Origin: Octopus sinensis
Lineage: Eukaryota
Length of the DNA: 38,878 nt
NCBI RefSeq assembly: GCF_006345805.1
Contig: NW_021835718.1
Span: 1-38,878, forward strand
Direction of reading: 5' to 3'
Part shown: positions 1 to 37,566 of the stretch, piece by piece
Position numbering within the stretch: position 1 is the stretch's first letter
Layout: each line of letters begins with the position of its first letter
Notes under the pieces: generated by a model
Databases searched by the model: none
The model's input: only the letters and a program-made list of their open reading frames with translations
Told to the model about the DNA's origin: nothing
Position numbers and translations under genes: made by a program

Positions 1-112
1 CCTTGTTTTGAAATTGTATGGATAATACTGTATTAATTCTGGTGCCTCAACGTAAGTACCATATTCATCTGAATCTAAATTTTTGCTGAACTCATCTATA
101 TATATATATATA

Positions 113-271
113 TGACAGGATTCTTTCAGTTTCCGTCTACCAAATCCACTCCCAAGGATTTGCTCGGCTCGAGGCTATAAAGTAGAAGACACTTGGTCAA
201 GGTATCACACAATAAGACTAAACCCGGAACCATGTAATTGGAAAACAAGCTTCTTTACCACACAGCCACTG
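113..271 (-). mobile_element. SINE family A, 5' half (tRNA-like head and core)
   Basis: Reverse complement reads agtggctgtgtggtaaagaagcttgttttccaattacatggttccgggtttagtc...gtgtcttctac...gatttggtagacggaaactgaaagaatcctgtc and matches copies at 12992-13398 and 31475-31888. Confidence 0.85.
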
Positions 272-852: not shown

Positions 853-1290
853 AAGTCGGCGAGCTGGCAGAATCGTTGGTATGTTGGGCGAAATGCTTAG
901 CAGTATTTCGTCTGTCGCTACGTTCTGAGTTCAAATTCCGCCGAGGCCGACTTTGCATTTCATCCTTTCGGGGTCGATTAAATAAGTACCAGTTACGCAC
1001 TAGGGTCGATATAATCGACTTAATCCGTTTGTCGGTCCTTGTTTGTCCCCTCTGTGTGTAGCCCCTTGTGGGCAGTAAAGAAATAAGAAACGTTTGCACA
1101 ACGGGCGAAATGCTTAGAGGTATTTCGTCTGTCTTTACGTTCTGAGTTCTAATTCTGCCGAGGTCGACTTTGCCTTTTATCCTTTCAGGCTCGATAAATT
1201 AAGTACCAGTTGCGCCCTGGGGTCGATGTCATCGCCTATCCCCCTTCCCGCAATGTCAAGCTTTGAGCCTATTGTAGAAAGGATTATTTT
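853..1290 (+). mobile_element. SINE family B dimer (217-bp period)
   Basis: Head ggcgagctggcagaatcgtt, B box gagttcaaattcc, central gtcgactttgcctttcatcctttcggggtcgat domain present twice; unit starts at 904 and 1121. Confidence 0.9.
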
Positions 1291-2720: not shown

Positions 2721-3290
2721 GGCGGCGAGCTAGCAGAAACGTCAGCACGCCGGGCGAAATGCTTAGCGCTATTTCGTCTGCGTTACGTTGTGAGTTCGAA
2801 TTCCGCCGAGGTCGACTTTGCCTTTCATCCTTTCGGGGTCGATAAATTAAGTACCAGTTACGCACTGGGCTCGATGTAATCGACTTAATACCTATGTCTG
2901 TCCTTGTTTGTCCCCTCTGTGTTTAGCCCCTTGTGGGTAATAAAGAAATAGGTATTTCGTCTGCCGCTACGTTCTGAGTTCAAATTCCACCGAGGTCGAC
3001 TTTGCCTTTCATCCTTTCGGGGTCGATAAATTAAGTACCAGTTATGCACTGGTGTCGATATAATCGACTTAATCCGTTTGCCTGTCCTTGTTTGTCCTCT
3101 CTGTGTTTTGCCCCTTGTGAGTAGTAAAGAAATAGGTATTTCGTCTGCCGCTACGTTCTGAGCTCAAATTCCGTCGAGGTCGACTTCACCTCTCATCCTT
3201 TCGGGGTCGATAAATTAAGTACCAGTTGCGTGCAATCGATTGGCCCTCTCCCCGAAAATTTCGGGCCTTGTGCCTAGAGTAGAAAAGAAT
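2721..3290 (+). mobile_element. SINE family B trimer (183-184-bp period)
   Basis: Unit starts at 2770, 2953 and 3137; terminal unit ends ...gggccttgtgcctagagtagaaaag; possible imperfect TSD agttatatRaa. Confidence 0.9.
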
Positions 3291-6205: not shown

Positions 6206-6207
6206 AT

Positions 6208-6575
6208 AAGGCGGCGAGCTGGCAGAAACATTAGCACGTCGGGCGAAATGCGTAGCCGTATTTCGTCTGCCGTTACGTTCTGAGATCGACTTTGCCTTTC
6301 ATCCTTTCGGGGTCGATAAATTAAGTACCAGTTACGCACTGGGGTCGATGTAATCGACTTAATCCGTTTGTCTGTCCTTGTTTGTCCCCTCTGTGTTTCG
6401 CCCCTTGTGGGTAATAAAGAAATAGGTATTTCGTATATCGCTCCGTTCTGAGTTCAAATTCCGCCGAGGTCGACTTTACCTTTCATCCTTTCGGTGTCGA
6501 TAAATTAAGTACCGGTGAATCGACCTTACTCTTCCCCAAAATTTCAGGCCTTGTGCCTATAGTAGAAAGGATTAT
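6208..6575 (+). mobile_element. SINE family B dimer, with a short deletion in unit 1
   Basis: Unit starts at 6259 and 6427; the B-box segment is missing from unit 1. Confidence 0.9.
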
Positions 6576-6617
6576 TATCATTATTATTAATATTATCATC
6601 ATCATCATCATTATTAT

Positions 6618-6710
6618 TGCCTTTGCACAGCGTCTAACGCTGGAGATGTACTACGGTGTCAGCTGTTCACTACCAGTGAACTAAAGTAACACCTCTTATT
6701 TTTCGAGCAC
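6618..6710 (-). mobile_element. About 93-bp repeat, probable 3' end of a (TAA)n-tailed retroelement (copy 1)
   Basis: About 85% identical by eye to 8142-8233; on the minus strand both end ...gctgtgcaaaggc followed by aat repeats. Confidence 0.5.
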
Positions 6711-6716
6711 CTTCAT

Positions 6717-6915
<199 letters not shown>

Positions 6916-7103
6916 TATGTTTGACTTTTGCTTTATATTTGTACAAGTTGGCTCCAAGTCTCACCCAGAGACCTCAAGAGACAACAGGTTGGAAGTTCAT
7001 GTTGCTATGCCTAGTGTGCCATATATTTGGGGGGGTTTTTTTGGTGCTGTACTAGTGAATGTCTAAAAAAAACCGAAAATTATGTTTGTTTTAAACCCTG
7101 AGA

Positions 7104-8130
7104 TTACATAGAAAGTATTTTGCGTAGGATATGAACAGTTCCCATGAGCACTATCTTTTGAATTTCTGCCATTTTGGGGTTTCCTGGTATCTGAGTTAGG
7201 TAGCAATCAGCCCCTTTCGCTATCATTCCCAGGGCACCTATGATTACAGGTATTATTTTAGTCTTCAGGTTCCAAATTTTGCTGATTTCTATTTCAAGAT
7301 CCTTATATTTGCTCAGTTTGTAGCCCCACCATCGCTTGACAACCGATGTTGATGTATTTGCGTTGTCGTAACTTAGCGTTTCGGCAAGAGCGCCCGATAG
7401 AGTAAGTACAAGGCTTAGAAAGAATAAGTCCTGTGGTCGATTTCTTCGAGTAAAGGTGCTGCTCCATCATGGCCGTAATCAGATGACTAAATGAATAAAA
7501 TAATATTTATATAGAGATTTAGATGAATATGGTACTTAAGTTGAGGCACCAGAATTTAGTACGGTATTAACCATACAATTTCAAAGTAAGGTGATTAAAA
7601 TCAAAATAAACAACAGGATATCCAGAGGTAAATGGAGTCGCATGAAACGATTGTATTGCATTACCTCGGGATATCCTGTTACTTATTTTGATACACACAC
7701 ACACACACACACACCACTCACAAACACACAAACACACAGATACGTTTATATCGATTGGGACAGTCATATCAATGAGGAGGCATGTTCTTTGTCTGAAGTC
7801 TTTCAATATGATGTCTGGCCTATTTGTATCTATCTTTCTGTCAGTTTGAATGGTGAAGTTCCAGAGGAGTGAGTCGTGGTCATTTTCAAGCACTGGAGGT
7901 GGTTTGTGTTCCCACCAGTTTTTTTCATGGGGCAAATCCAGGTTTTTGCAAATTACCCAGTGAATATATTGTGCAGCTCTATCATGCCTGTTGAGATACT
8001 CTGTAGGCGCTAGAAGACTACATTTGGAGACAACATGATCAATGGTTTCATTTTGTTGTTGACATACACGACATGTTGGGCTACTGCCGTTCTTTAATAT
8101 GTTGGCCTGATAGTTTCTTGTTGGTAGGCC
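7104..8130 (-). pseudogene. Split C-terminal ORF remnant of the R4-like element (zinc knuckle and PD..D endonuclease)
   Basis: CxxC...ETxxH...C knuckle and PD..D motif; continuity broken at 7320-7736; explains ORF-track entry 7567..7935. Confidence 0.85.
7315..7730 (+). repeat. 416-bp inserted copy of 10122-10537
   Basis: Identical by eye over 416 bp, including an 11-unit (AC) tract. Confidence 0.92.
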
Positions 8131-8141
8131 ATCATCAATAT

Positions 8142-8233
8142 TGCCTTTGCACAGCTTCTAACGCTGGAGGTGTACACAATGTTAGCTGTTCACTACCAGT
8201 GAATAAAGGTAACACCTCTTATTTTTCGAGCAC
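8142..8233 (-). mobile_element. About 92-bp repeat, copy 2 of 6618-6710
   Basis: tgcctttgcacagc..ctaacgctggag...agctgttcactaccagtgaa...aacacctcttatttttcgagcac is shared. Confidence 0.5.
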
Positions 8234-8237
8234 ATTC

Positions 8238-8252
8238 ATTATTATAATTATA

Positions 8253-8320
<68 letters not shown>

Positions 8321-8347
8321 GTTGTTGTTGTTGTTGTTGTTGTTATT
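8238..8347. repeat. (ATT)n/(GTT)n microsatellite
   Basis: Read directly. Confidence 0.9.
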
Positions 8348-8613: not shown

Positions 8614-8624
8614 ATATTTAAGAG

Positions 8625-9006
8625 GAGGCACAATGGCCCAGTGGTTAGGGCAGCGGACTCGCGGTCGTAGGATCGCGGTTTCGATTCCCAGACCGGGCGT
8701 TGTGAGTGTTTATTGAGCGAAAACACCTAAAGCTCCACGAGGCTCCGGCAGGGGATGGTGGTGATCCCTGCTGTACTCTTTCACTAAAACTTTCTCTCAC
8801 ACTTACTTCCTGTTTCTGTTGTACCTGTATTTCAAAGGGCCGGCCTTGTCACTCTCTGTGTCACGCTGAATATCCCCGAGAACTACGTTAAAGGTACACA
8901 TGTCTGTGGAGTGCTCAGCCACTTACACGTTAATTTCACGAGCAGGCTGTTCCGTTGATCGGATCAACCGGAACCCTCGTCGTCGTAACCGACGGAGTGC
9001 TTCCAA
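8625..9006 (+). mobile_element. SINE family C, full length, 11-bp TSD (probably one of the octopus OR-type tRNA-Arg-related SINEs)
   Basis: A box tggcccagtgg, B box gtttcgattcc; TSD atatttaagag at 8614-8624 and 9007-9017; the family name is recalled, not verified. Confidence 0.88.
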
Positions 9007-9943: not shown

Positions 9944-10310
9944 GGCGCAAGCATGGCTCTCTGGGAAGAAGCTTGCTTCCCAACCATATGGTTCCGCATG
10001 ACACCTTGCGCAAGTGTCTTCTAGTATAGCCTCGGGCCGACCAGAGCCTTGTGAGTGGATTTAGTCGACGGAATCTGGAAGAAACCCGTCGCATATATAT
10101 GTGTGAGTGTGTGCGTGCCTGAGTTTGTAGCCCCACCATCGCTTGACAACCGATGTTGATGTATTTGCGTTGTCGTAACTTAGCGTTTCGGCAAGAGCGC
10201 CCGATAGAGTAAGTACAAGGCTTAGAAAGAATAAGTCCTGTGGTCGATTTCTTCGAGTAAAGGTGCTGCTCCATCATGGCCGTAATCAGATGACTAAATG
10301 AATAAAATAA
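9944..10310 (+). mobile_element. SINE family A, near full length
   Basis: Head ggcgcaagcatggctct, core caagtgtcttctagtatagcctcgggccgacc, internal TA/TG tract, 3' half ending ggccgtaatcagatgactaaa. Confidence 0.85.
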
Positions 10311-10527
10311 TATTTATATAGAGATTTAGATGAATATGGTACTTAAGTTGAGGCACCAGAATTTAGTACGGTATTAACCATACAATTTCAAAGTAAGGTG
10401 ATTAAAATCAAAATAAACAACAGGATATCCAGAGGTAAATGGAGTCGCATGAAACGATTGTATTGCATTACCTCGGGATATCCTGTTACTTATTTTGATA
10501 CACACACACACACACACACACCACTCA

Positions 10528-10537
<10 letters not shown>
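10122..10537 (+). repeat. Source copy of the 416-bp duplication
   Basis: Contiguous with the 5' half of its SINE (9944-10121), unlike the copy at 7315. Confidence 0.9.
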
Positions 10538-10572
<35 letters not shown>

Positions 10573-10964
10573 GGAACACACGAGTTGATATGTATAAGGA
10601 AAACAGGACAAGGTAGAAAATGCTTAAATAATTTTATCATGAAAAACATCTTGGTACCGGTTTCAGTCTTTGTGACTTCTTGAACTGATAGTAAAAAACA
10701 GTAAAAAAGAGAGACAGAGACAGACATACAGAAAAGGGAAATGCCACTTGCATTTGAAAACTACGTAAATATTTTTTTAAAAAAACATTTCATTTAATCT
10801 TTCCACAATTTAATTGTTTTTCGTGCTTTACTCTAAGTTGAAAAAGTGGCAAAGACTGGAACAAGTAAAAAATGTTCTTCATGATAAAATTATTTTAACA
10901 TTTTCTACCTTGTCTTATTTTCCTTATGTAAATATATATGTGTGTGTGTGTGAGCGTGTATAAT

Positions 10965-12795: not shown

Positions 12796-12991
12796 ATATC
12801 CCATAAGTTTTAATTTACTAAAAACTTTCTTTTCTTCTGAAGTTGAGATACACCTCATAGTCCATGCATCTTTTACGCCATCAAATGCGGTAGCTTCTTA
12901 GCTTTTTTCTCTCCGATGTCCCTAAACACGTACCAGCATCATTTGGTGGTTTGTCTAAAATATTAGCAAAAGTCTAGGGTTACTCTCTCTA

Positions 12992-13210
12992 TTACTCTTT
13001 TACTTGTTTCAGACATTTGATTGCGGCCATGCTGGAGCACCGCCTTTAGTCGAGCAACTCGACCCGGGGACTTATTCTTCGTAAGCCCAGTACTTATTCT
13101 ATCGGTCTCTTTTGCCGAACCGCTAAGTGACGGGGACATAAACACACCAGCATCGGTGGTCAAGCAATCTAGGGGGACAAACACAGACACACAAACACAC
13201 ACGCATAGAC

Positions 13211-13243
<33 letters not shown>

Positions 13244-13398
13244 TACGACGGGCTTCTTTCAGTTTTCGTCTACCAAATCCACTCACAAGGCTTTGGTCGA
13301 CCCGAGGCTATAGTAGAAGACACTTGCCCAAGGTGCCACGCAGTGGGACTGAACCCGGAACCATGTGGTTGGTAAGCAAGCTACTTACCACACAGCCA
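12992..13398 (-). mobile_element. SINE family A, full length, young
   Basis: Close match to 27051-27483 and 31475-31888; internal (TA)/(CA) tract. Confidence 0.9.
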
Positions 13399-13413
13399 TA
13401 TTTCTTTATTTAT

Positions 13414-14255
13414 GCGGCGAGCGAGTTGGCAGAAACGCTAGCACACCGGGCAAAATGCTAAGCGGTATTTCGTCTGCTGTTACGTTGTGAGTTCAAATTC
13501 CGCCGAGGTCGACTTTGCCTTTCATCCTTTCGGGGTCGATTAAATAAGTACCAGTTACGCACTGGTGTCGATGTAATCGACTTAATCCGTGTGTCTGTCC
13601 TTGTTTGTCCTCTCTGTGTTTAGCCCCTTGTGGGTAGTAAAGAAATAAGTATTTCGTCTGTCTTTACATTCTGAGTTCAAATTCCGCCGAGGTCGACTTT
13701 GCCTTTCATCCTTTCAGGGTCGATAAATTAAGTACTAGTTACACACCGGGGTCGACATAATGGACTTAATTTGTTTGTCTGTCCTTGTTTGTCTCCTCTG
13801 TGTTTAGTCCCTTGTGGGCAATAAAGAAATAAGAAGCGATCGCACGCCGGGCGAAATACTTAGCTGTATTTCGTCTGTCTTTACGTTCTGAGTTCAAATT
13901 TCACCGAGGTCGACTTTGCCTTTCATCCTTTCGGGGTCGATAAATTAAATACCTATTTCTTTACTACCCACAAGGGGCTAAACACAGAGAGGACAAACAA
14001 GGACAGACACCAGTGCATAACTGGTACTTAATTTATCGACCCCGAAAGGATGAAAGGCAACGTAGACCTCGGCGGAATTGGAACTCAGAACATAACGGCA
14101 GACGAAATACGGCTACGCATTTCGCCCGACGTGCTAACGTTTCTGCCAGCTCGCCGCCGATAAATTAAATACCAGTTGCGTACTGGGATCGATCTAATCG
14201 ACTGGCCCCTCCCCCCCAAAATTGAGGGCTTTGTGCCTAGAGTAGAAAAGATGAT
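13414..14255 (+). mobile_element. SINE family B trimer interrupted by a nested copy
   Basis: Unit starts at 13466, 13650 and 13867; the terminal unit resumes at 14159. Confidence 0.9.
13954..14158 (-). mobile_element. Nested inverted SINE family B copy with a 15-bp TSD
   Basis: TSD gataaattaaatacc at 13939-13953 and 14159-14173. Confidence 0.9.
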
Positions 14256-16878: not shown

Positions 16879-17266
16879 GGAGGCGCAATGGTCCAGTGGT
16901 TAGGACAGAGGGCTCGCGGTCGTAGGAACGCGGTTTCGATTCCCAGACCAGGCGGTGTGAGTGTTTACTGATTGAAAACACCTACAGCTCCACGATGCTC
17001 CGGCGGGGGGTGCTGGCGAACCCTGCTGTACTCTTTCACCACAACTTTCTCGCACTCTTTCTTCCTGTTTCTGTTGTACCTGTATTTCAAAGGGCCAGCT
17101 TTGTCACACTCTGTGTCACGTTGAATCTCCTCGAGAACTACGTTAAGGGTACACGTGTCTGTGAAGTGCTCAGACACTTGCACGTTAATTTCACGAGCAG
17201 GCTATTCCGTTGATTGGATCGACTGGAACCTCCGTCGTTGTAACCGACGGTGTACCACGACGACGA
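16879..17266 (+). mobile_element. SINE family C, full length, (ACG)n tail
   Basis: Colinear with 8625-9006. Confidence 0.9.
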
Positions 17267-17470
17267 CATACATACATACATACATACATACATGCATACA
17301 TACATACATACATACATACATACATACATACATACATGCATACATACATACATACATACATACATACATACATACATACATACATACATACATACATACA
17401 TACATACATGCATGCATGCATACATACATACATACATGCATACATACGTACTTACGTACGTACATACGTA
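17267..17470. repeat. (TACA)n microsatellite
   Basis: Read directly. Confidence 0.9.
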
Positions 17471-17629
17471 CATTGGCCGTGGTCCAATAACTGAAACTAG
17501 TGAGACAAAAGATAGATGATATCCTTCGCAGACAATATATGCATGTGCGCATGCCCTGTGTATGCATGTATATGAGAGTGTGTATGTGTAAATATGTGTG
17601 TGTGTGAGTATGCATGGGTGCATATCTAT

Positions 17630-17830
17630 TATTTATTTCAGTCATTAGACTGCGGGCCATGCTGGGGCACCGACTTGAAGTTTTAGTCGAATAAATCGAC
17701 CCCAGTACATTTTTTAAATCGGTTCTTATGCCGAACCGCCATGTAACGAGGAAGTAAACACACCGACAACGGTTGTCAAAGGAACAAACACAGACACGAA
17801 GACATACAAAACGCACACACACACACACGC
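17630..17830 (-). mobile_element. SINE family A 3' half
   Basis: tttcagtcattagactgcgggccatgctggggcacc...gccgaaccgc...gtaaacacaccgacaacggttgtcaa. Confidence 0.75.
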
Positions 17831-17984
17831 ACACACACACACACATATATATATATACATATACATATATGTATGTTTATTTATATATATATATGATATA
17901 TAATATAAATAATATATAAATATATGCATATATACATACATATATGTACATACCTACATATATATGTATATATACATGAATATA

Positions 17985-18175
17985 TGGGTACAGGACATCA
18001 AAAAAACACAATGAGAAACGAAAACATAAAAACAAAAACATAGAAACGAACTTTTTTCGAACAACGAAAAAAACAAACAGCGAAACAACACCTACAACAT
18101 AAAGAATATTCCTCTTCCTCAGTTGTCCCTGTTACATCTACTCCACGTTTCGAAGGTAATATAATACATTATATG
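17985..18175. mobile_element. Possible Penelope-like element terminal remnant
   Basis: A-rich body ending ...ctccacgtttcgaagg; the cgaaacgt motif is typical of PLE repeats as recalled; no ORF. Confidence 0.3.
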
Positions 18176-18219
18176 TATTATATTTATATATACACTCATA
18201 CATACATACATACATACAC

Positions 18220-18340
18220 GACAAGTGTATCAAGGATAAAGTAGAAGAAACTTGCTTGTAAGATTGAACCCAGAACCATGTGGTTTGGAAGCAAACATCT
18301 TATCACGCATTCATGTCTACACCATGTGTGCTGACACGCA

Positions 18341-18415
<75 letters not shown>

Positions 18416-18721
18416 TATATGTATGTTTATTTATATATATATATATACACATATACATATATGTATGTTTATTTATATATATATATATACATATACATAT
18501 ATGTATGTTTATTTATATATATATGATATATAATATAAATAATATATAAATATATGCATATACATACATACATACTACATACATACATACATACATACAC
18601 GACAAGTGTATCAAGGATAAAGTAGAAGAAACTTGCTTGTAAGATTGAACCCAGAACCATGTGGTTTGGAAGCAAACATCTTATCACGCATTCATGTCTA
18701 CACCATGTGTGCTGACACGCA
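18220..18721 (+). repeat. Direct duplication of a 121-bp segment (18220-18340 = 18601-18721) that includes a SINE A head fragment
   Basis: Identical by eye, period 381 bp. Confidence 0.9.
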
Positions 18722-18739
18722 CACACACACATATATATT

Positions 18740-18894
18740 TATATACATACATACATACATACATACATACATACATACATACATACACATACATACATGC
18801 ATGCATGCATACATACATACATACACATACATACATACATGCATGCATACATACATACATACATGCATGCATACATACATACATACATACATTA

Positions 18895-18951
<57 letters not shown>

Positions 18952-19130
18952 CACGTGTGTGTGTGTGTGTGTGTGTGTATTTGTGTGCATGGATTTATGT
19001 ATGTATATATGTATGTATGTATGTACATATGTATGTACGTATTTATGTATGTATGTATGTATGTAGGTATGTATGTATGTATGTATGTATGTATGCATGT
19101 ATGTATGTATTTACGTATTATGTGTATGTA
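18740..19130. repeat. (CATA)n-(GACA)n-(GT)n-(TATG)n compound microsatellite
   Basis: Read directly. Confidence 0.9.
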
Positions 19131-19135
19131 TATAT

Positions 19136-19907
19136 GTGTATTAACGTGAGTATGTATGTACGTATTTATGTATGTATGTCATTGTTCAGTTTTATTTCAA
19201 GATTTCTTGTCAATAGAGAATAATCGGTTTCTAACCTAGATCCAAGTCGTCTTCGTTGTATGTATGTATGTATGTAAGTATGTATGTATGTATGTATGTA
19301 TGTATGTAGTATGTATGTATGTATGTATGTATGTATGTATGTATGTATATATGTATTTACGTATGTATTTCATTGTTCAGTTTTATTTTAAGATTTCTTG
19401 CCAATAGAAAAAGAACCGGTTTCTAACCTAGATCCAATGTGTCTTCATTGGAATTTCAACAGCATCAACAGAGTATTTTATTATGTATGTATGCATGTTT
19501 GTATGTATGTATGTTTGTATGTATGTATATGTGCAGATTTGTATGCATGTATGTATATATGTGTTTGTACATCCGTATTTACGTGTGTCTGTATGTATAT
19601 CTATGTATGTATGTTTGTATGCATGTATGTATGTATTCATGTTTGTATGTACGTTTTTACATCCGTATTTACGTATGTATGTATGTGTATTAACGTGAGT
19701 ATGTATGTACGTATTTATGTATGTATGTCATTGTTCAGTTTTATTTCAAGATTTCTTGTCAATAGAGAATAATCGGTTCCTAACCTAGATCCAAGTCGTC
19801 TTCGTTGTATGTATGTATGTATGTACGTATGTATGTATGTATGTATGTATGTATGTATGTATGTATGTATGTATGTATGTATGTATGTATGTATGCGTGT
19901 ATGTATG

Positions 19908-19941
<34 letters not shown>

Positions 19942-20352
19942 TGTAGGTATGTATGTATGTATGCGTGTATGTATGTATATATGTATGTATTCACGTACTT
20001 ATGTATGTATGTATGTATGTATGTATATATGTATTTACGTATGTATTTCATTGTTCAGTTTTATTTTAAGATTTCTTGCCAATAGAAAAAGAACCGGTTT
20101 CTAACCTAGATCCAATGTGTCTTCATTGGAATTTCAACAGCATCAACAGAGTATTTTATTATGTATGCATGTTTGTATGTATGTATGTTTGTATGTATGT
20201 ATATGTGCAGATTTGTATGCATGTATGTATATATGTACGTTTGTACATCCGTATTTACGTGTGTCTGTATGTATATATCTATGTATGTATGTTTGTATGC
20301 ATGTATGTATGTATTCATGTTTGTATGTACGTTTTTACATCCGTATTTACGT
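19136..20352 (+). repeat. Tandem duplication (19136-19684 and 19685-20352), each unit holding two copies of the (TATG)n-embedded element
   Basis: A copies at 19180 and 19729 differ by 1 nt; B copies at 19371 and 20049 are identical by eye. Confidence 0.88.
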
Positions 20353-20519
20353 ATGTATGTATGTATGTTTGTATGTATATATGTTTTTATGCATGTATGT
20401 ATGTACATTTCTACATCCGTATTTACGTGTGTAAGTATGTATATGGTTGGGTGGTAAGGAGCTTTCTTCCCAAATACATGGTTCCAGGGGCTGCATGTGT
20501 GTGTGGCAAGGCTTCCTCA

Positions 20520-26982: not shown

Positions 26983-27050
26983 GCTTCAACCCACGAACTC
27001 ATATAAAGAATGTTGCAAACCAAATCCAAAAACTATATATATATATATAC

Positions 27051-27483
27051 TTTTACTCTTTTACCTGTGTCAGTCATTTGACTACGGCCATGCTAGAGCA
27101 CCGGCTTTAGTCGAGCAAATCGACCCCAGGACTTATTCTTTGGAAGTCTAGTACTTATTTTATCGGTGTCTTTTGCCGAACCACTAAGTTACAGGGACGT
27201 AAACACACCAGCATCGGTTGTCAAGCGATGTTGGGGGACAAACACAGGCACACAAACATACAAACACACACACTCACACACATACACATATATATATGTA
27301 TATACACACATACATATATACGACGGGCTTCTTTCAGTTTCCGTCTACCAAATCCACTAACAAGGCTTTGGTCGGCCCGAGGCTATAGTAGAAGACACTT
27401 GCCCAACGTGCCACGCAGTGGGAATGAACCCGTAACCATGTGGTTGGTAAGCAAGCTACTTACCACGAAGCCACTCCTGCGCC
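27051..27483 (-). mobile_element. SINE family A, full length
   Basis: Colinear with 12992-13398. Confidence 0.9.
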
Positions 27484-28409
27484 TGTATTTATATATATAT
27501 ATGTATATACACGCGTGCGCATATATATTTAAATACATGTACTTATATAAAACACAGAAAAGCGGACAACTCTAACACGTACACATACATAAATGCTATT
27601 TATACATACACATAACACATACACACACAGACTCTCTCAAAGACAAACATTTGTCCTTAATTAAAAATTTCGAGTATAACCACACGCGTACGAAAAGAAG
27701 TTTTATTCGTATACATTTACGACATTTTACGTACCTGGAGCCAACGAGAATGATTTTATGTAATTGTAGGACCCGTTAGATATGGTAGCTAAATCCACTT
27801 GAAATCCTATCCCACCATCATGGAAATTGACATGTTTGATAATGTGGCCGTTGGTTCATTAATCATAGATAACTTGATGGGTTAGTCAAAGAAGGAATAT
27901 CTTTACTCATCAGTCTTGTCAGTCAAGATTGCCCTGGAGTCAAACAACAACTTACATAACTGCGTTAATTCATGTATATTAAGTGGCCTGGATACTCATG
28001 AACACGTATAAGAGAGTATGGGAGTATGTGCGTATGTTCCTGTGTGCTTGTATGTGTATGTGTACATCTGTATGTGCATGTGTGTGTGTGTGTGTGAAAA
28101 ATTGGACGGTGTAGGTATATGTGAATGAATATGATGGAGTAAATAGTATTTTAGGTGCTTGTAATTTGATAAGCTGCAGTAAGTTAGTTGCCCAGAATTT
28201 TCCCCAAGAAACGTTATGCATGTATTTGATGTGTATATGTATATATATTTTTTCTCTCTCTCTTTCTCTCTCTCACTCTCTCACTCTGTTCTGGTTATGA
28301 TTGTGAATGGTGTACGTATAAATATATGTATGTTAGTGTGAGAGCGTATGCATATATACTCACAAATATTTACATATACAGCTAGACATAATGTGTGTAG
28401 GTAGCTATA

Positions 28410-31474: not shown

Positions 31475-31888
31475 GAGTAGAAGTGGCTGTGTGGTAAGTA
31501 GCTTGCTTATCAACCACATGGTTCCGGGTTCAGTTGCACGCGAGGAACATTGGGCAAGTGTCTTCTACTATAGTCTCGGGCCGACTAAAGCCTTGTGAGT
31601 GGATTTGGTAGACGAAACTGAAAGAATCCCGTCGTATATATGTATATATATGTATGTGAGTATGTATGTTTATGTGTCTGTGTTTGCCCCCCACCCCACC
31701 CCAACATCATTTGACAACCGATGCTGGTGTGTTTACGCCCCCGTAACTTAGCGGTTCGGCAAAAGAGACCGATAGAATAAGTACTAGGCTTTCAAAGAAT
31801 AAGTCCTGGGGTCGATTTGCTCGACTAAAGGCGGTGCTCCAGCATGGCCACAGTCAAATGACTGAAACAAGTAAAAGAGTAAAAGAGA
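31475..31888 (+). mobile_element. SINE family A, full length, young
   Basis: Head gtggctgtgtggtaagtagcttgcttatcaaccacatggttccgggttcag to tail gactgaaacaagtaaaagagtaaaagag. Confidence 0.9.
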
Positions 31889-36985: not shown

Positions 36986-37318
36986 AAGGCGGCGAGCTGG
37001 CAGAAACGTTAGCACGCCGGGCATAATGCTTTGCAGTACTTCGTCTGCCGTTACGTTCTGAGTTCAAATTCCGCTGAGGTCGACTTTGCCTTTAATCCTT
37101 TCGGGGTCGATTAAATAAGTACCAGTTACGCACTGGGGTCGATATAATCGACTTAATCCGTTTGTCTGTCCTTGTTTGTCCTCTCTGTGTTTAGCCCCTT
37201 GTGGGTAGTAAAGAAATAGGTATTTTGTCTGCCGTTACGTTCTGAGTTCAAATTCCGCCGAGGTCATCTTTGCCTTTCATCCTTTTGGGGTCGACAAATT
37301 AAGTGCCAGTTGCGTACT
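36986..37318 (+). mobile_element. SINE family B dimer, second unit truncated
   Basis: Unit starts at 37037 and 37221 (184-bp period). Confidence 0.9.
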
Positions 37319-37566
37319 TAAATTGCCAAAATTTGAAATCAGTATTCGAATTAATGGTTGTTGATTCCAAACAGTGAATAAAGTTCATTTTTAAAAACTG
37401 TATGTGAGCAAAGAAAGAGAGTGAGAGAGAGAGAGTATGTGTGTGTGTGTGCGTGTGTATATTTATACATGTATGTATGTATGTATATACATGTGTGTAT
37501 GTATATATGTATCTATCTATATGTATGTATACATACACACACATAACACACACACACACATGCACA

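What the first reader, a model, noticed from the sequence alone, without database searches (positions are those of the whole stretch)
7315..7736. 416-bp identical copy of sequence 2.8 kb away pasted into an R4 endonuclease ORF without a TSD
Seen: 7315-7730 equals 10122-10537, including the (AC)11 count. The 10122 copy is continuous with its SINE 5' half, so it is the donor. The insert splits ...DINVSV from KLSKYKDL..., has no TSD or tail, and the junctions share short microhomology (agttt on the left; aca, within CA repeats, on the right). A few R4 codons appear to be lost (inferred from the family motif). Established: templated insertions with microhomology are a signature of synthesis-dependent or polymerase-theta end joining. 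Alternative: a 5'-truncated, 3'-extended SINE transcript used as an RNA patch. It must be very recent.
Basis: partly seen in the sequence, partly recalled or inferred. Interest (0 to 1): 0.7.

Follow-up and report, generated by a model that had tools for sequence, protein, structure and literature searches.

The report
Repair patch copied from nearby DNA
A 416-base stretch of an octopus-type genome (half a SINE plus the DNA next to it) was copied from 2.8 kb away into a dead retrotransposon fragment. The join has the scars of sloppy chromosome-break repair, so it is a clean but ordinary example of a process already catalogued in vertebrates, plants, flies and worms.

Summary
Window 7315-7730 equals 10122-10537 base for base (416 bp, including (AC)11). 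It is the only near-identical dispersed duplicate in the window; the next best pair is 94% identical.

The 10122 copy is the source, because the SINE consensus runs straight across its left edge. The 7315 copy sits inside the C-terminal zinc-finger/restriction-like-endonuclease region of a 5'-truncated R4/Dong-type LINE fragment embedded in (AAT)n.

Relatives read ...DINVS[A/V]KTYQKLSKYKDL, so four codons (12 bp) of target were lost. The left junction shares AGTTT and the right about CACA. There is no TSD and no tail. One mismatch (7731) lies next to the right junction.

This anatomy matches the "repair-mediated duplications" of Pace et al. 2009: donor under 5 kb away, up to 619 bp, microhomology 2-9 nt, deletion 1-15 nt, never a poly(A). 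I therefore read it as a DNA-templated, microhomology-primed patch (SDSA / theta-mediated end joining / MMBIR class), probably under 1-1.5 My old.

The rivals are an RNA patch, an assembly artefact and a composite mobile unit. They are weaker but not excluded, because no reads or second assembly could be reached.

The parts
7315..7730 (+). Inserted copy (acceptor), identical to 10122-10537. It consists of the SINE 3' part (~191 bp) plus 225 bp of non-SINE DNA, including a 93-nt hairpin and (AC)11.
   Evidence: Exact-match extension; BLAST; alignment A1.
7315..7319 (.). Left junction microhomology AGTTT. It is present in the donor, and its reverse complement AAACT supplies the conserved Lys-Leu codons of the LINE frame (AAA CTg).
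   Evidence: K and L are invariant or nearly invariant in 12 relatives. The chance that 5 foreign bases would encode K-L in frame is about 1/256.
7731..7738 (.). Right junction octamer AACACACA. It continues the donor's CA repeat with one mismatch (A for C at 7731). Its last 3-4 bases (CAC/CACA) overlap the LINE's Val/Ser codons, which is the right microhomology.
   Evidence: protein alignments of all relatives end at 7738.
10122..10537 (+). Donor segment, continuous on the left with the 5' half of its SINE and on the right with (CA)20.
9944..10312 (+). Donor SINE, old and degenerate. It is 70-74% identical to three full copies in the window and lacks a 15-bp segment (GGGTTCAGTCCCACT) holding the B-box-like motif.
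   Evidence: BLAST; alignment A3.
10313..10505 (+). Non-SINE part of the donor ('X'). The stretch 10320-10398 has a third, ~90% identical copy at window 1-77 (minus strand). The stretch 10407-10499 is a near-perfect 93-nt hairpin.
   Evidence: Folds: RNA -44.8 kcal/mol, z -8.8; DNA -26.2 kcal/mol, z -8.65. No Rfam family.
10532..10571 (.). (CA)20 microsatellite in which the copied tract ends.
7104..7319 (-). Downstream part of the LINE reading frame: KLSKYKDLEIE...RKILSM plus the stop codon (7104-7106).
7735..8157 (-). Upstream part of the LINE reading frame: 141 open codons ending ...DMTVPIDINVSV. It holds a CCHC-type zinc knuckle and the RPD...D part of a restriction-like endonuclease domain. 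The fragment is 5'-truncated and has no reverse-transcriptase domain.
   Evidence: Pfam zf-RVT E 1.1e-4, below the family cut-off. A profile of relatives hits the C-terminus of R2 retrotransposon proteins 9nl3_A and 9dou_A at E 1e-4.
6925..7103 (-). Probable 3' UTR of the LINE fragment, running into the (AAT)n tail/target.
6716..6920 (.). (ATA/ATT)n microsatellite flanking the 3' end of the LINE fragment.
8241..8345 (.). (ATT)n(GTT)n microsatellite flanking the 5' end of the LINE fragment.

Best explanation
This is a repair-mediated duplication, a templated 'patch'. A chromosome break, or a stalled and disengaged nascent strand, arose inside a dead R4/Dong-type LINE fragment. About 12 bp were lost from the ends. 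One 3' end paired through a few bases with a non-homologous site 2.8 kb away on the same chromosome. It was extended by a DNA polymerase for about 415-424 nt across the 3' half of an old SINE, its flank, a hairpin and into a CA repeat, and then let go. The new tail paired through a second few-base match with the other broken end and was sealed.

Shown here: the copy, its direction, the 12-bp loss, the two microhomologies, and the absence of TSD and tail. Inferred: that the template was DNA, that the event was germline, and which enzyme set did it (SDSA-like copying finished by theta-mediated or other microhomology end joining, or FoSTeS/MMBIR template switching). These sub-pathways give the same product and cannot be separated from sequence alone.

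The event has no functional consequence for the LINE, which was already truncated.
For: (1) A 416-bp exact copy, the only near-identical dispersed pair in 38.9 kb.
(2) The donor is continuous with the SINE consensus across its left edge, and the acceptor interrupts one reading frame whose two halves abut in 12 relatives.
(3) Four codons (12 bp) of the target are lost.
(4) Microhomology is 5 nt on the left and about 4 nt on the right. For blunt random joins P(MH>=5) = 0.0046.
(5) There is no TSD and no tail.
(6) The donor is 2.8 kb away in cis and in the same orientation. In the human catalogue of such events 66% of donors lie under 3 kb away, lengths reach 619 bp, microhomology is 2-9 nt and deletions 1-15 nt. 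The commonest proximal classes are MH+Del and MH+Del+Filler, and 0 of 39 proximal events had a poly(A).
(7) A 12-bp loss falls in the ~7-13 bp range typical of theta-mediated germline repair in C. elegans.
(8) A single mismatch 4-8 nt from the right junction fits error-prone repair synthesis.
(9) The donor SINE lacks its B-box-like segment, which argues against a SINE transcript as the template.
Against: No reads, second haplotype, second assembly or sister-species empty site could be reached, so the junctions rest on one assembly. Junction anatomy alone does not exclude an RNA template, because microhomology at the 5' join, priming on CA/TG and target deletions also occur in endonuclease-independent retroposition. 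Polymerase-theta templated inserts are described as coming from sequence in close proximity to or immediately flanking the break, so the strict 'pol theta' label does not fit a 416-bp copy from 2.8 kb away. The pre-insertion nucleotide sequence is inferred from protein relatives (74-75% identity at best), so microhomology lengths are +/-1-2 nt. The SINE-plus-X arrangement occurs twice in the window, which leaves some room for a mobile composite unit.
Confidence: 0.68

Rival explanations
1. RNA-mediated patch. A transcript running through the donor (the SINE 3' half plus flank, ending in the CA repeat) was reverse-transcribed into the break. Three routes are possible: LINE machinery with 5' truncation and 3' transduction, endonuclease-independent retroposition, or a repair polymerase using a nascent cis transcript as template.
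For: The block starts inside a SINE and runs past its 3' end, as a read-through transcript would. The SINE-plus-X adjacency is seen a second time at window 1-260, which could reflect earlier 3' transduction. The minus-strand target end ...TCTGTG could prime on a ...CACA RNA end. Pol theta can reverse transcribe RNA and support RNA-templated repair (PMC8195485). Dong-R4 and other LINEs are reported as recently active in Octopus vulgaris.
Against: A retroposed copy landing within 3 kb of its source in a genome of a few Gb has a prior of about 2e-6, whereas proximal templated repair is the rule. There is no TSD and no tail. The donor SINE lacks the B-box-like segment, so it is a poor Pol III unit. 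A T4 run at 10493-10496 lies 41 bp before the end of the copy. The donor SINE is about 25-30% diverged from its relatives, so it is not a plausible master copy. Only a cis nascent-transcript version escapes the distance argument, and there is no evidence here for such a transcript.
Confidence: 0.1
2. Assembly artefact. The 416 bp were placed into the LINE fragment by a chimeric read, a gap-filling step or a consensus error, and the real chromosome has an intact (or merely 12-bp-deleted) LINE fragment there.
For: Perfect identity, including a microsatellite count, over 416 bp at 2.8 kb distance is what a copy-paste error would give. Both edges lie next to simple repeats, and the region is extremely repeat-rich. 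No independent data could be obtained.
Against: Assemblers join on long overlaps or k-mers, not on 4-5 nt, and an artefact would not be expected to delete exactly 12 bp of target and leave microhomology at both joins. The window has no N in 38.9 kb despite microsatellite arrays longer than 100 bp, which points to a long-read assembly where such insertions need multi-read support (inference). No other suspicious identical duplicate exists in the window. The one mismatch at 7731 is not expected from a pasted sequence.
Confidence: 0.12
3. The block is a mobile or extrachromosomal unit in its own right. It could be a composite [SINE 3' half + X + (CA)n] element that inserted independently, or a small circular DNA excised from the donor and re-integrated.
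For: Both components are repeated: SINE copies at 12984-13399, 27038-27501, 31484-31876 and elsewhere, and X at 1-77. The ~0.4-kb size is in the range reported for small circular DNAs (own knowledge, not tested).
Against: No other copy in the window shares either edge of the block. The left edge falls inside a conserved SINE segment, not at an element end, and the right edge is inside a microsatellite. Other copies are at most 90% identical, against 100% for the neighbour. A re-integrated circle would usually be permuted relative to its source, but this copy is colinear.
Confidence: 0.05

Closest known systems
[quoted passage not shown]
   Same: A TE is interrupted by a copy of unique or other DNA whose donor lies within 5 kb on the same chromosome. 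Length is within the reported range (up to 619 bp). The junction has microhomology plus a small target deletion, with no poly(A) and no TSD. The detection logic is also the same: two TE halves that abut in the consensus.
   Different: The event is in an octopus-type invertebrate genome, whereas the catalogue covers vertebrates. At 416 bp it lies in the upper tail (reported mean 162 bp). The donor is itself part SINE, part hairpin-bearing flank. This is a single event, not a survey.
Polymerase-theta-mediated end joining with templated inserts (e.g. van Schendel et al. 2015, PMC4490562; Carvajal-Garcia et al. 2020, PMC7165422)
   Same: Germline break repair that leaves a ~7-13 bp deletion, short junctional homology and inserted sequence identical to nearby DNA.
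   Different: In the paper read here the inserts are described as copied from sequence in close proximity to or immediately flanking the break; that they are typically only a few to tens of nt long is my own knowledge. This case is 416 bp from 2.8 kb away. Pol theta dependence is untestable here.
FoSTeS / microhomology-mediated break-induced replication (Hastings et al. 2009, PMC2621351; templated insertions linked to MMBIR, PMC8421209)
   Same: Two template switches at 4-5 nt microhomologies, a templated segment of hundreds of bp from a nearby site in direct orientation, and a point mismatch close to a junction. The donor is surrounded by structure-prone DNA: a hairpin, (CA)20, a 335-bp foldback and (TA)n.
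   Different: This is a simple one-segment insertion rather than a complex rearrangement. A replicative origin cannot be shown.
LINE-mediated retroposition with 5' truncation and 3' transduction
   Same: The copy begins inside a SINE and extends past its 3' end, with microhomology at the 5' join.
   Different: There is no TSD and no tail, the source is 2.8 kb away, and the source SINE lacks its B-box-like segment.

Membership tests
Repair-mediated duplication (proximal, SDSA-type; Pace et al. 2009) | The acceptor interrupts a sequence whose two halves are adjacent in the uninterrupted form (consensus positions within +/-30 bp). | tested here: met
   Twelve relatives align to 7738 and resume at 7319, with 4-5 residues between.
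Repair-mediated duplication (proximal, SDSA-type; Pace et al. 2009) | The inserted DNA (>=50 bp) is a copy of a donor within 5 kb on the same chromosome. | tested here: met
   416 bp at 100% identity, with the donor start 2807 bp downstream in the same orientation.
Repair-mediated duplication (proximal, SDSA-type; Pace et al. 2009) | Break-repair scars at the junctions: microhomology (2-9 nt), deletion (1-15 nt) and/or filler, with no poly(A/T). | tested here: met
   AGTTT (5 nt) on the left and CAC(A) on the right, a 12-bp deletion, one mismatched base near the right join, and no tail.
Repair-mediated duplication (proximal, SDSA-type; Pace et al. 2009) | An empty orthologous or allelic site exists. 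| not testable with these tools
   No octopus assembly or reads are reachable.
Polymerase-theta templated insertion (TMEJ) | The template lies in close proximity to or immediately flanks the break; that the insert is usually a few to tens of nt is own knowledge. | tested here: not met
   The insert is 416 bp and the template is 2.8 kb away.
Polymerase-theta templated insertion (TMEJ) | Dependence on POLQ. | not testable with these tools
   This needs genetics.
FoSTeS/MMBIR templated insertion | Template switches at 2-5+ nt microhomology to nearby sequence, with error-prone synthesis near the junctions. | tested here: met
   Microhomology at both joins and one mismatch at 7731, 4-8 nt from the right join.
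FoSTeS/MMBIR templated insertion | Replicative (fork- or BIR-associated) origin. | not testable with these tools
   The only evidence is circumstantial: structure-prone DNA around the donor.
Non-LTR retroposition (TPRT) of a SINE read-through transcript | Target-site duplication. | tested here: not met
   There is no direct repeat at the edges, and 12 bp of target are lost instead.
Non-LTR retroposition (TPRT) of a SINE read-through transcript | A 3' tail (poly(A) or the family's own tail) at the insert's 3' end. | tested here: not met
   The insert ends in ...CAAACACACA AACA, inside the donor's own CA repeat, and other SINE copies end about 225 bp earlier.
Non-LTR retroposition (TPRT) of a SINE read-through transcript | A transcription-competent source element. 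| tested here: inconclusive
   The donor lacks the 15-bp B-box-like segment present in three other copies. Pol II read-through cannot be excluded.
R4/Dong clade of restriction-like-endonuclease (RLE) LINEs (identity of the target) | A C-terminal CCHC zinc knuckle followed by a PD-(D/E)xK-type RLE domain. | tested here: met
   The motifs C..C...H....C and RPD...D...K are conserved in alignment A2. The profile hits the R2 protein C-terminus at E 1e-4. zf-RVT scores E 1.1e-4, below the Pfam cut-off.
R4/Dong clade of restriction-like-endonuclease (RLE) LINEs (identity of the target) | Placement of the reverse transcriptase within the R4 clade rather than R2, NeSL, CRE or HERO. | not testable with these tools
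   The fragment is 5'-truncated and has no RT domain. The support is indirect: Dong-R4 has by far the most recently active insertions among the RLE-type LINEs listed for O. vulgaris (1129, against 13 Hero and 1 R2).
R4/Dong clade of restriction-like-endonuclease (RLE) LINEs (identity of the target) | Insertion into a (TAA)n microsatellite (Dong-type specificity; own knowledge, Kojima & Fujiwara 2004). | tested here: met
   The fragment is flanked on both sides by (ATT)n on the plus strand, which is (AAT)n on the element's strand.

The most novel reading that the evidence does not exclude
The patch was copied from RNA, not DNA. A nascent plus-strand transcript running through the locus was still tethered in cis and served as template for a repair polymerase at the break, which would explain both the read-through-like content of the block and the closeness of the donor. 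A related reading is that SINE-internal microsatellites and hairpins in octopus genomes are recurrent switch points. These would shuffle SINE halves and their flanks locally, so that break repair rather than retroposition spreads some 'SINE fragments'. The second SINE-plus-X arrangement at window 1-260, which lacks just the SINE part found in the block, hints at this.
Probability: 0.07. Interest if true: 0.6.

Novelty: new member of a known kind. Interest (0 to 1): 0.25.

Why it matters
On its own it matters little: a neutral insertion into a dead LINE fragment, formed by a process already catalogued in vertebrate genomes. It has three modest uses.

First, it is a very clean and very young natural example in a cephalopod, with both junctions and the donor intact, which makes it a good presence/absence marker and a calibration case.

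Second, it shows that in SINE-rich octopus genomes some 'SINE fragments' are dispersed by break repair rather than by retroposition. This affects TE age and activity estimates based on identity between copies.

Third, the Pace-type scan (a TE interrupted by a copy of DNA from under 5 kb away) could be run on octopus assemblies to measure how common this is.

Tried and rejected
Independent support for the junctions:
- Exact look-ups of ORFs spanning the right junction (122 aa) and the donor's left edge (130 aa) were not on record.
- The best octopus relative, P0001, is also not on record.
- The contig of relative P0049 (ENA ERZ25067570) was fetched. It carries none of the window's SINEs or X, so it is not an octopus and is of no use.
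- A metagenome-contig scan for a 33-nt motif of X gave 0 hits.

RNA families: Rfam has nothing at gathering score in the whole window. Only sub-threshold miRNA-like noise falls on the hairpin, and ARAGORN finds no tRNA.

Other readings considered:
- LTR-pair reading (two 416-bp direct repeats flanking a 2.4-kb internal region). I rejected it because the two LINE halves abut across the first repeat, and nothing links the sequence left of the first repeat to that right of the second. There are also no TG..CA ends and no TSD.
- Reverse direction (7315 copy as the source). I rejected it because the SINE consensus spans 10121|10122.
- Tandem or segmental duplication. I rejected it because the sequences upstream of the two copies are unrelated.

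Pfam scans of seven other ORFs in the window gave nothing.

Full report
OBSERVATION

The claim is correct to the base. Extending from inside the block, 7315-7730 equals 10122-10537 (416 bp), and the bases immediately outside differ on both sides. The (AC) run inside the block has 11 units in both copies. The next eight bases still match at 7 of 8 positions: 7731-7738 AACACACA against donor CACACACA (BLAST 427 bp, 99.5%). A self-comparison of the window finds no other dispersed pair above 94.3% identity. The window has no N and is packed with microsatellites and SINEs. The best protein relatives of its LINE fragment are from Octopus bimaculoides (74-75% identity), so the source is an octopus-type genome.

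THE DONOR

Four copies of one SINE family in the window share common 5' and 3' ends and have unrelated flanks (alignment A3). By that alignment the donor SINE is 9944-10312. The family consensus runs straight across the left edge of the block (...GTGCCTG|TGTTTGTCCCC...; donor ...GTGCCTG|AGTTTGTAGCCCC...). The 10122 copy is therefore in its original context and the 7315 copy is derived.

The block has two parts. The first is the SINE 3' part (10122-10312, ~191 bp). The second is 225 bp that are not SINE: a stretch I call X, a 93-nt near-perfect hairpin (10407-10499), (AC)11 and the start of a CA repeat. The hairpin folds at -44.8 kcal/mol as RNA (z -8.8) and -26.2 kcal/mol as DNA (z -8.65).

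The donor SINE is old. It is 70-74% identical to the three full copies. It also lacks a 15-bp segment (GGGTTCAGTCCCACT) that the other three carry and that holds a B-box-like motif.

THE TARGET

On the minus strand the flanks form one reading frame. There are 141 open codons ending ...LIDMTVPIDINVSV (7735-8157), and 71 codons KLSKYKDLEIE...RKILSM plus a stop (7104-7319). Ninety database proteins match. A profile of 13 of them hits the C-terminus of solved R2 retrotransposon proteins at E 1e-4, covering the zinc knuckle and the RPD...D...K endonuclease motifs. Pfam gives only a sub-threshold zf-RVT match.

The fragment has no reverse-transcriptase part, so it is a dead, 5'-truncated copy. It is flanked on both sides by (ATT)n, which is (AAT)n on its own strand.

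RLE-bearing LINE clades are typically target-specific, several for microsatellites (PMC4640811). Dong-R4 has by far the most recently active insertions among the RLE-type LINEs listed for O. vulgaris (PMC13282606). 'R4/Dong-type' is therefore the likely label, but the clade cannot be proved without the RT domain.

THE JUNCTIONS

In tblastn every relative aligns up to 7738 and resumes at 7319. The two octopus relatives read DINVSA-KTYQ-KLSKY and DINISV-KTYQ-KLSKY, so four codons (12 bp) are missing.

The conserved K-L just after the gap is encoded by AAACT|G. The AAACT is the reverse complement of the first five bases of the block (AGTTT), which the donor also carries. This is a 5-nt microhomology, and the chance that five foreign bases would give K-L in frame is about 1/256.

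On the right, the LINE's Ser-Val codons (TCT GTG, which is CAC AGA on the plus strand) overlap the donor's CA repeat by CAC(A). Between the exact match and this overlap lies one mismatched base (7731). For blunt random joins P(MH>=5) = 0.0046. There is no direct repeat at the edges and no tail.

MECHANISM

The anatomy is that of a templated repair patch. A break or disengaged 3' end in the LINE fragment lost about 12 bp. It primed at a few-base match on a non-homologous site 2.8 kb away in cis and copied about 415-424 nt. It then released within the CA repeat and annealed to the other end by a second few-base match.

The closest published description is the 'repair-mediated duplication' class (PMC2671141). 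That study found 824 human events with donors under 5 kb away (66% under 3 kb) and lengths up to 619 bp. Microhomology was 2-9 nt and deletions 1-15 nt, and the commonest scar classes were MH+Del and MH+Del+Filler. None of 39 inspected proximal events had a poly(A), whereas 59% of distant ones did. The present event falls inside every one of those ranges.

The 12-bp loss also matches the ~7-13 bp deletions of theta-mediated germline repair in C. elegans. The templated inserts described there, however, come from sequence in close proximity to or immediately flanking the break (PMC4490562). A strict 'pol theta templated insert' label therefore fails on distance, and by my own knowledge also on size. 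SDSA-type copying or FoSTeS/MMBIR switching (PMC2621351) fits better.

The donor is surrounded by structure-prone DNA: the hairpin, (CA)20, a 335-bp foldback at 10594-10927 (DNA fold z -7.9) and long (TA)n. This is compatible with a replication-stress origin but proves nothing. Which sub-pathway acted cannot be read from the product.

AGE

There are zero differences in 416 bp. I took a rate of about 0.0036 substitutions per site per My per copy, from JC 0.09 = 25 My in PMC13282606. This gives a 95% upper bound of about 1.0 My, or about 1.6 My if the 7731 mismatch is counted as a later substitution. Gene conversion between the copies could hide a greater age.

RIVALS

RNA template. The block looks like a 5'-truncated read-through transcript, and the SINE-plus-X arrangement occurs a second time at window 1-260. 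Against this:
- a retroposed copy landing within 3 kb of its source has a prior of about 2e-6;
- there is no TSD or tail;
- the donor SINE lacks its B-box-like segment;
- a T4 run lies inside the block.
Only a cis nascent-transcript version, using for example the reverse-transcriptase activity of pol theta (PMC8195485), escapes the distance argument.

Assembly artefact. It cannot be excluded, because no reads or second assembly were reachable. However, assemblers do not join on 4-5 nt or delete 12 bp of target. The gap-free, microsatellite-rich window suggests a long-read assembly, and a pasted sequence would not carry the 7731 mismatch.

Mobile composite unit or re-integrated circle. No other copy shares either edge. 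The left edge is inside a conserved SINE segment, and all other copies are at most 90% identical.

VERDICT

The event is a new instance, in a cephalopod, of a known kind of mutation. It is of modest interest: a young, clean marker, and a reminder that some SINE fragments are spread by repair.

Noticed in passing
window 1-260 (minus strand): A third copy of the non-SINE stretch X (1-77, ~90% identical to 10320-10398) again lies directly 3' of a SINE (about 104-260). That SINE keeps its 5' half, its internal (TA)n and perhaps its last ~20 bp, but lacks the 3' half that forms the SINE part of the 416-bp block. The copy is cut off by the window edge. I could not decide between a composite unit, old 3' transduction and a local duplication.
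   Followed up: partly
window 10407-10499 (and its copy 7600-7692): A 93-nt near-perfect hairpin with stems of about 10+12+7 bp (RNA -44.8 kcal/mol, z -8.8). It matches no Rfam family at gathering score, only sub-threshold miRNA-like hits. It could be a MITE remnant or a hairpin-RNA locus, and it is now present twice.
   Followed up: partly
window 10594-10927: A ~335-bp foldback or MITE-like element with ~100-bp arms at 83% identity (10594-10695 against 10827-10927). The DNA fold is -63 kcal/mol, z -7.9. It lies immediately after the donor's (CA)20 and before a long (TA)n array.
   Followed up: partly
window 6606-6737 and 8130-8260: A ~100-bp unit (ATTGCCTTTGCACAGC.TCTAACGCTGGAG...TTTTTCGAGCAC.TTCAT) plus adjoining ATT/ATA repeat occurs on both sides of the LINE fragment at 87% identity. 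It may be an unusually long target-site duplication of the LINE insertion or an older local duplication.
   Followed up: partly
window 9985-10000: The donor SINE lacks 15 bp (GGGTTCAGTCCCACT, a B-box-like motif) that the copies at 12984-13399, 27038-27501 and 31484-31876 retain.
   Followed up: yes
window 917-1243, 2782-3265, 6207-6560, 13479-13990, 37050-37350: A second SINE family (GGCGGCGAGCTGGCAGAAAC...) occurs repeatedly with partial internal tandem duplication at a 184-bp spacing. The copy at 6207-6560 ends in an (ATT)n/(ATC)n tail.
   Followed up: no
window 8620-9000: This is a third, different SINE-like element with a tRNA-like head (GGAGGCACAATGGCCCAGTGGTTAGGGCAGCGGACTCGCGG...). It lies between the acceptor and the donor.
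   Followed up: no
window 17200-20450: Very long (CATA)n/(TATG)n tetranucleotide arrays lie in opposite orientation, forming ~200-bp inverted repeats about 2.3 kb apart at up to 93% complementarity. A 482-bp direct duplication at 93% identity lies within them (19257-19732 / 19934-20409).
   Followed up: no
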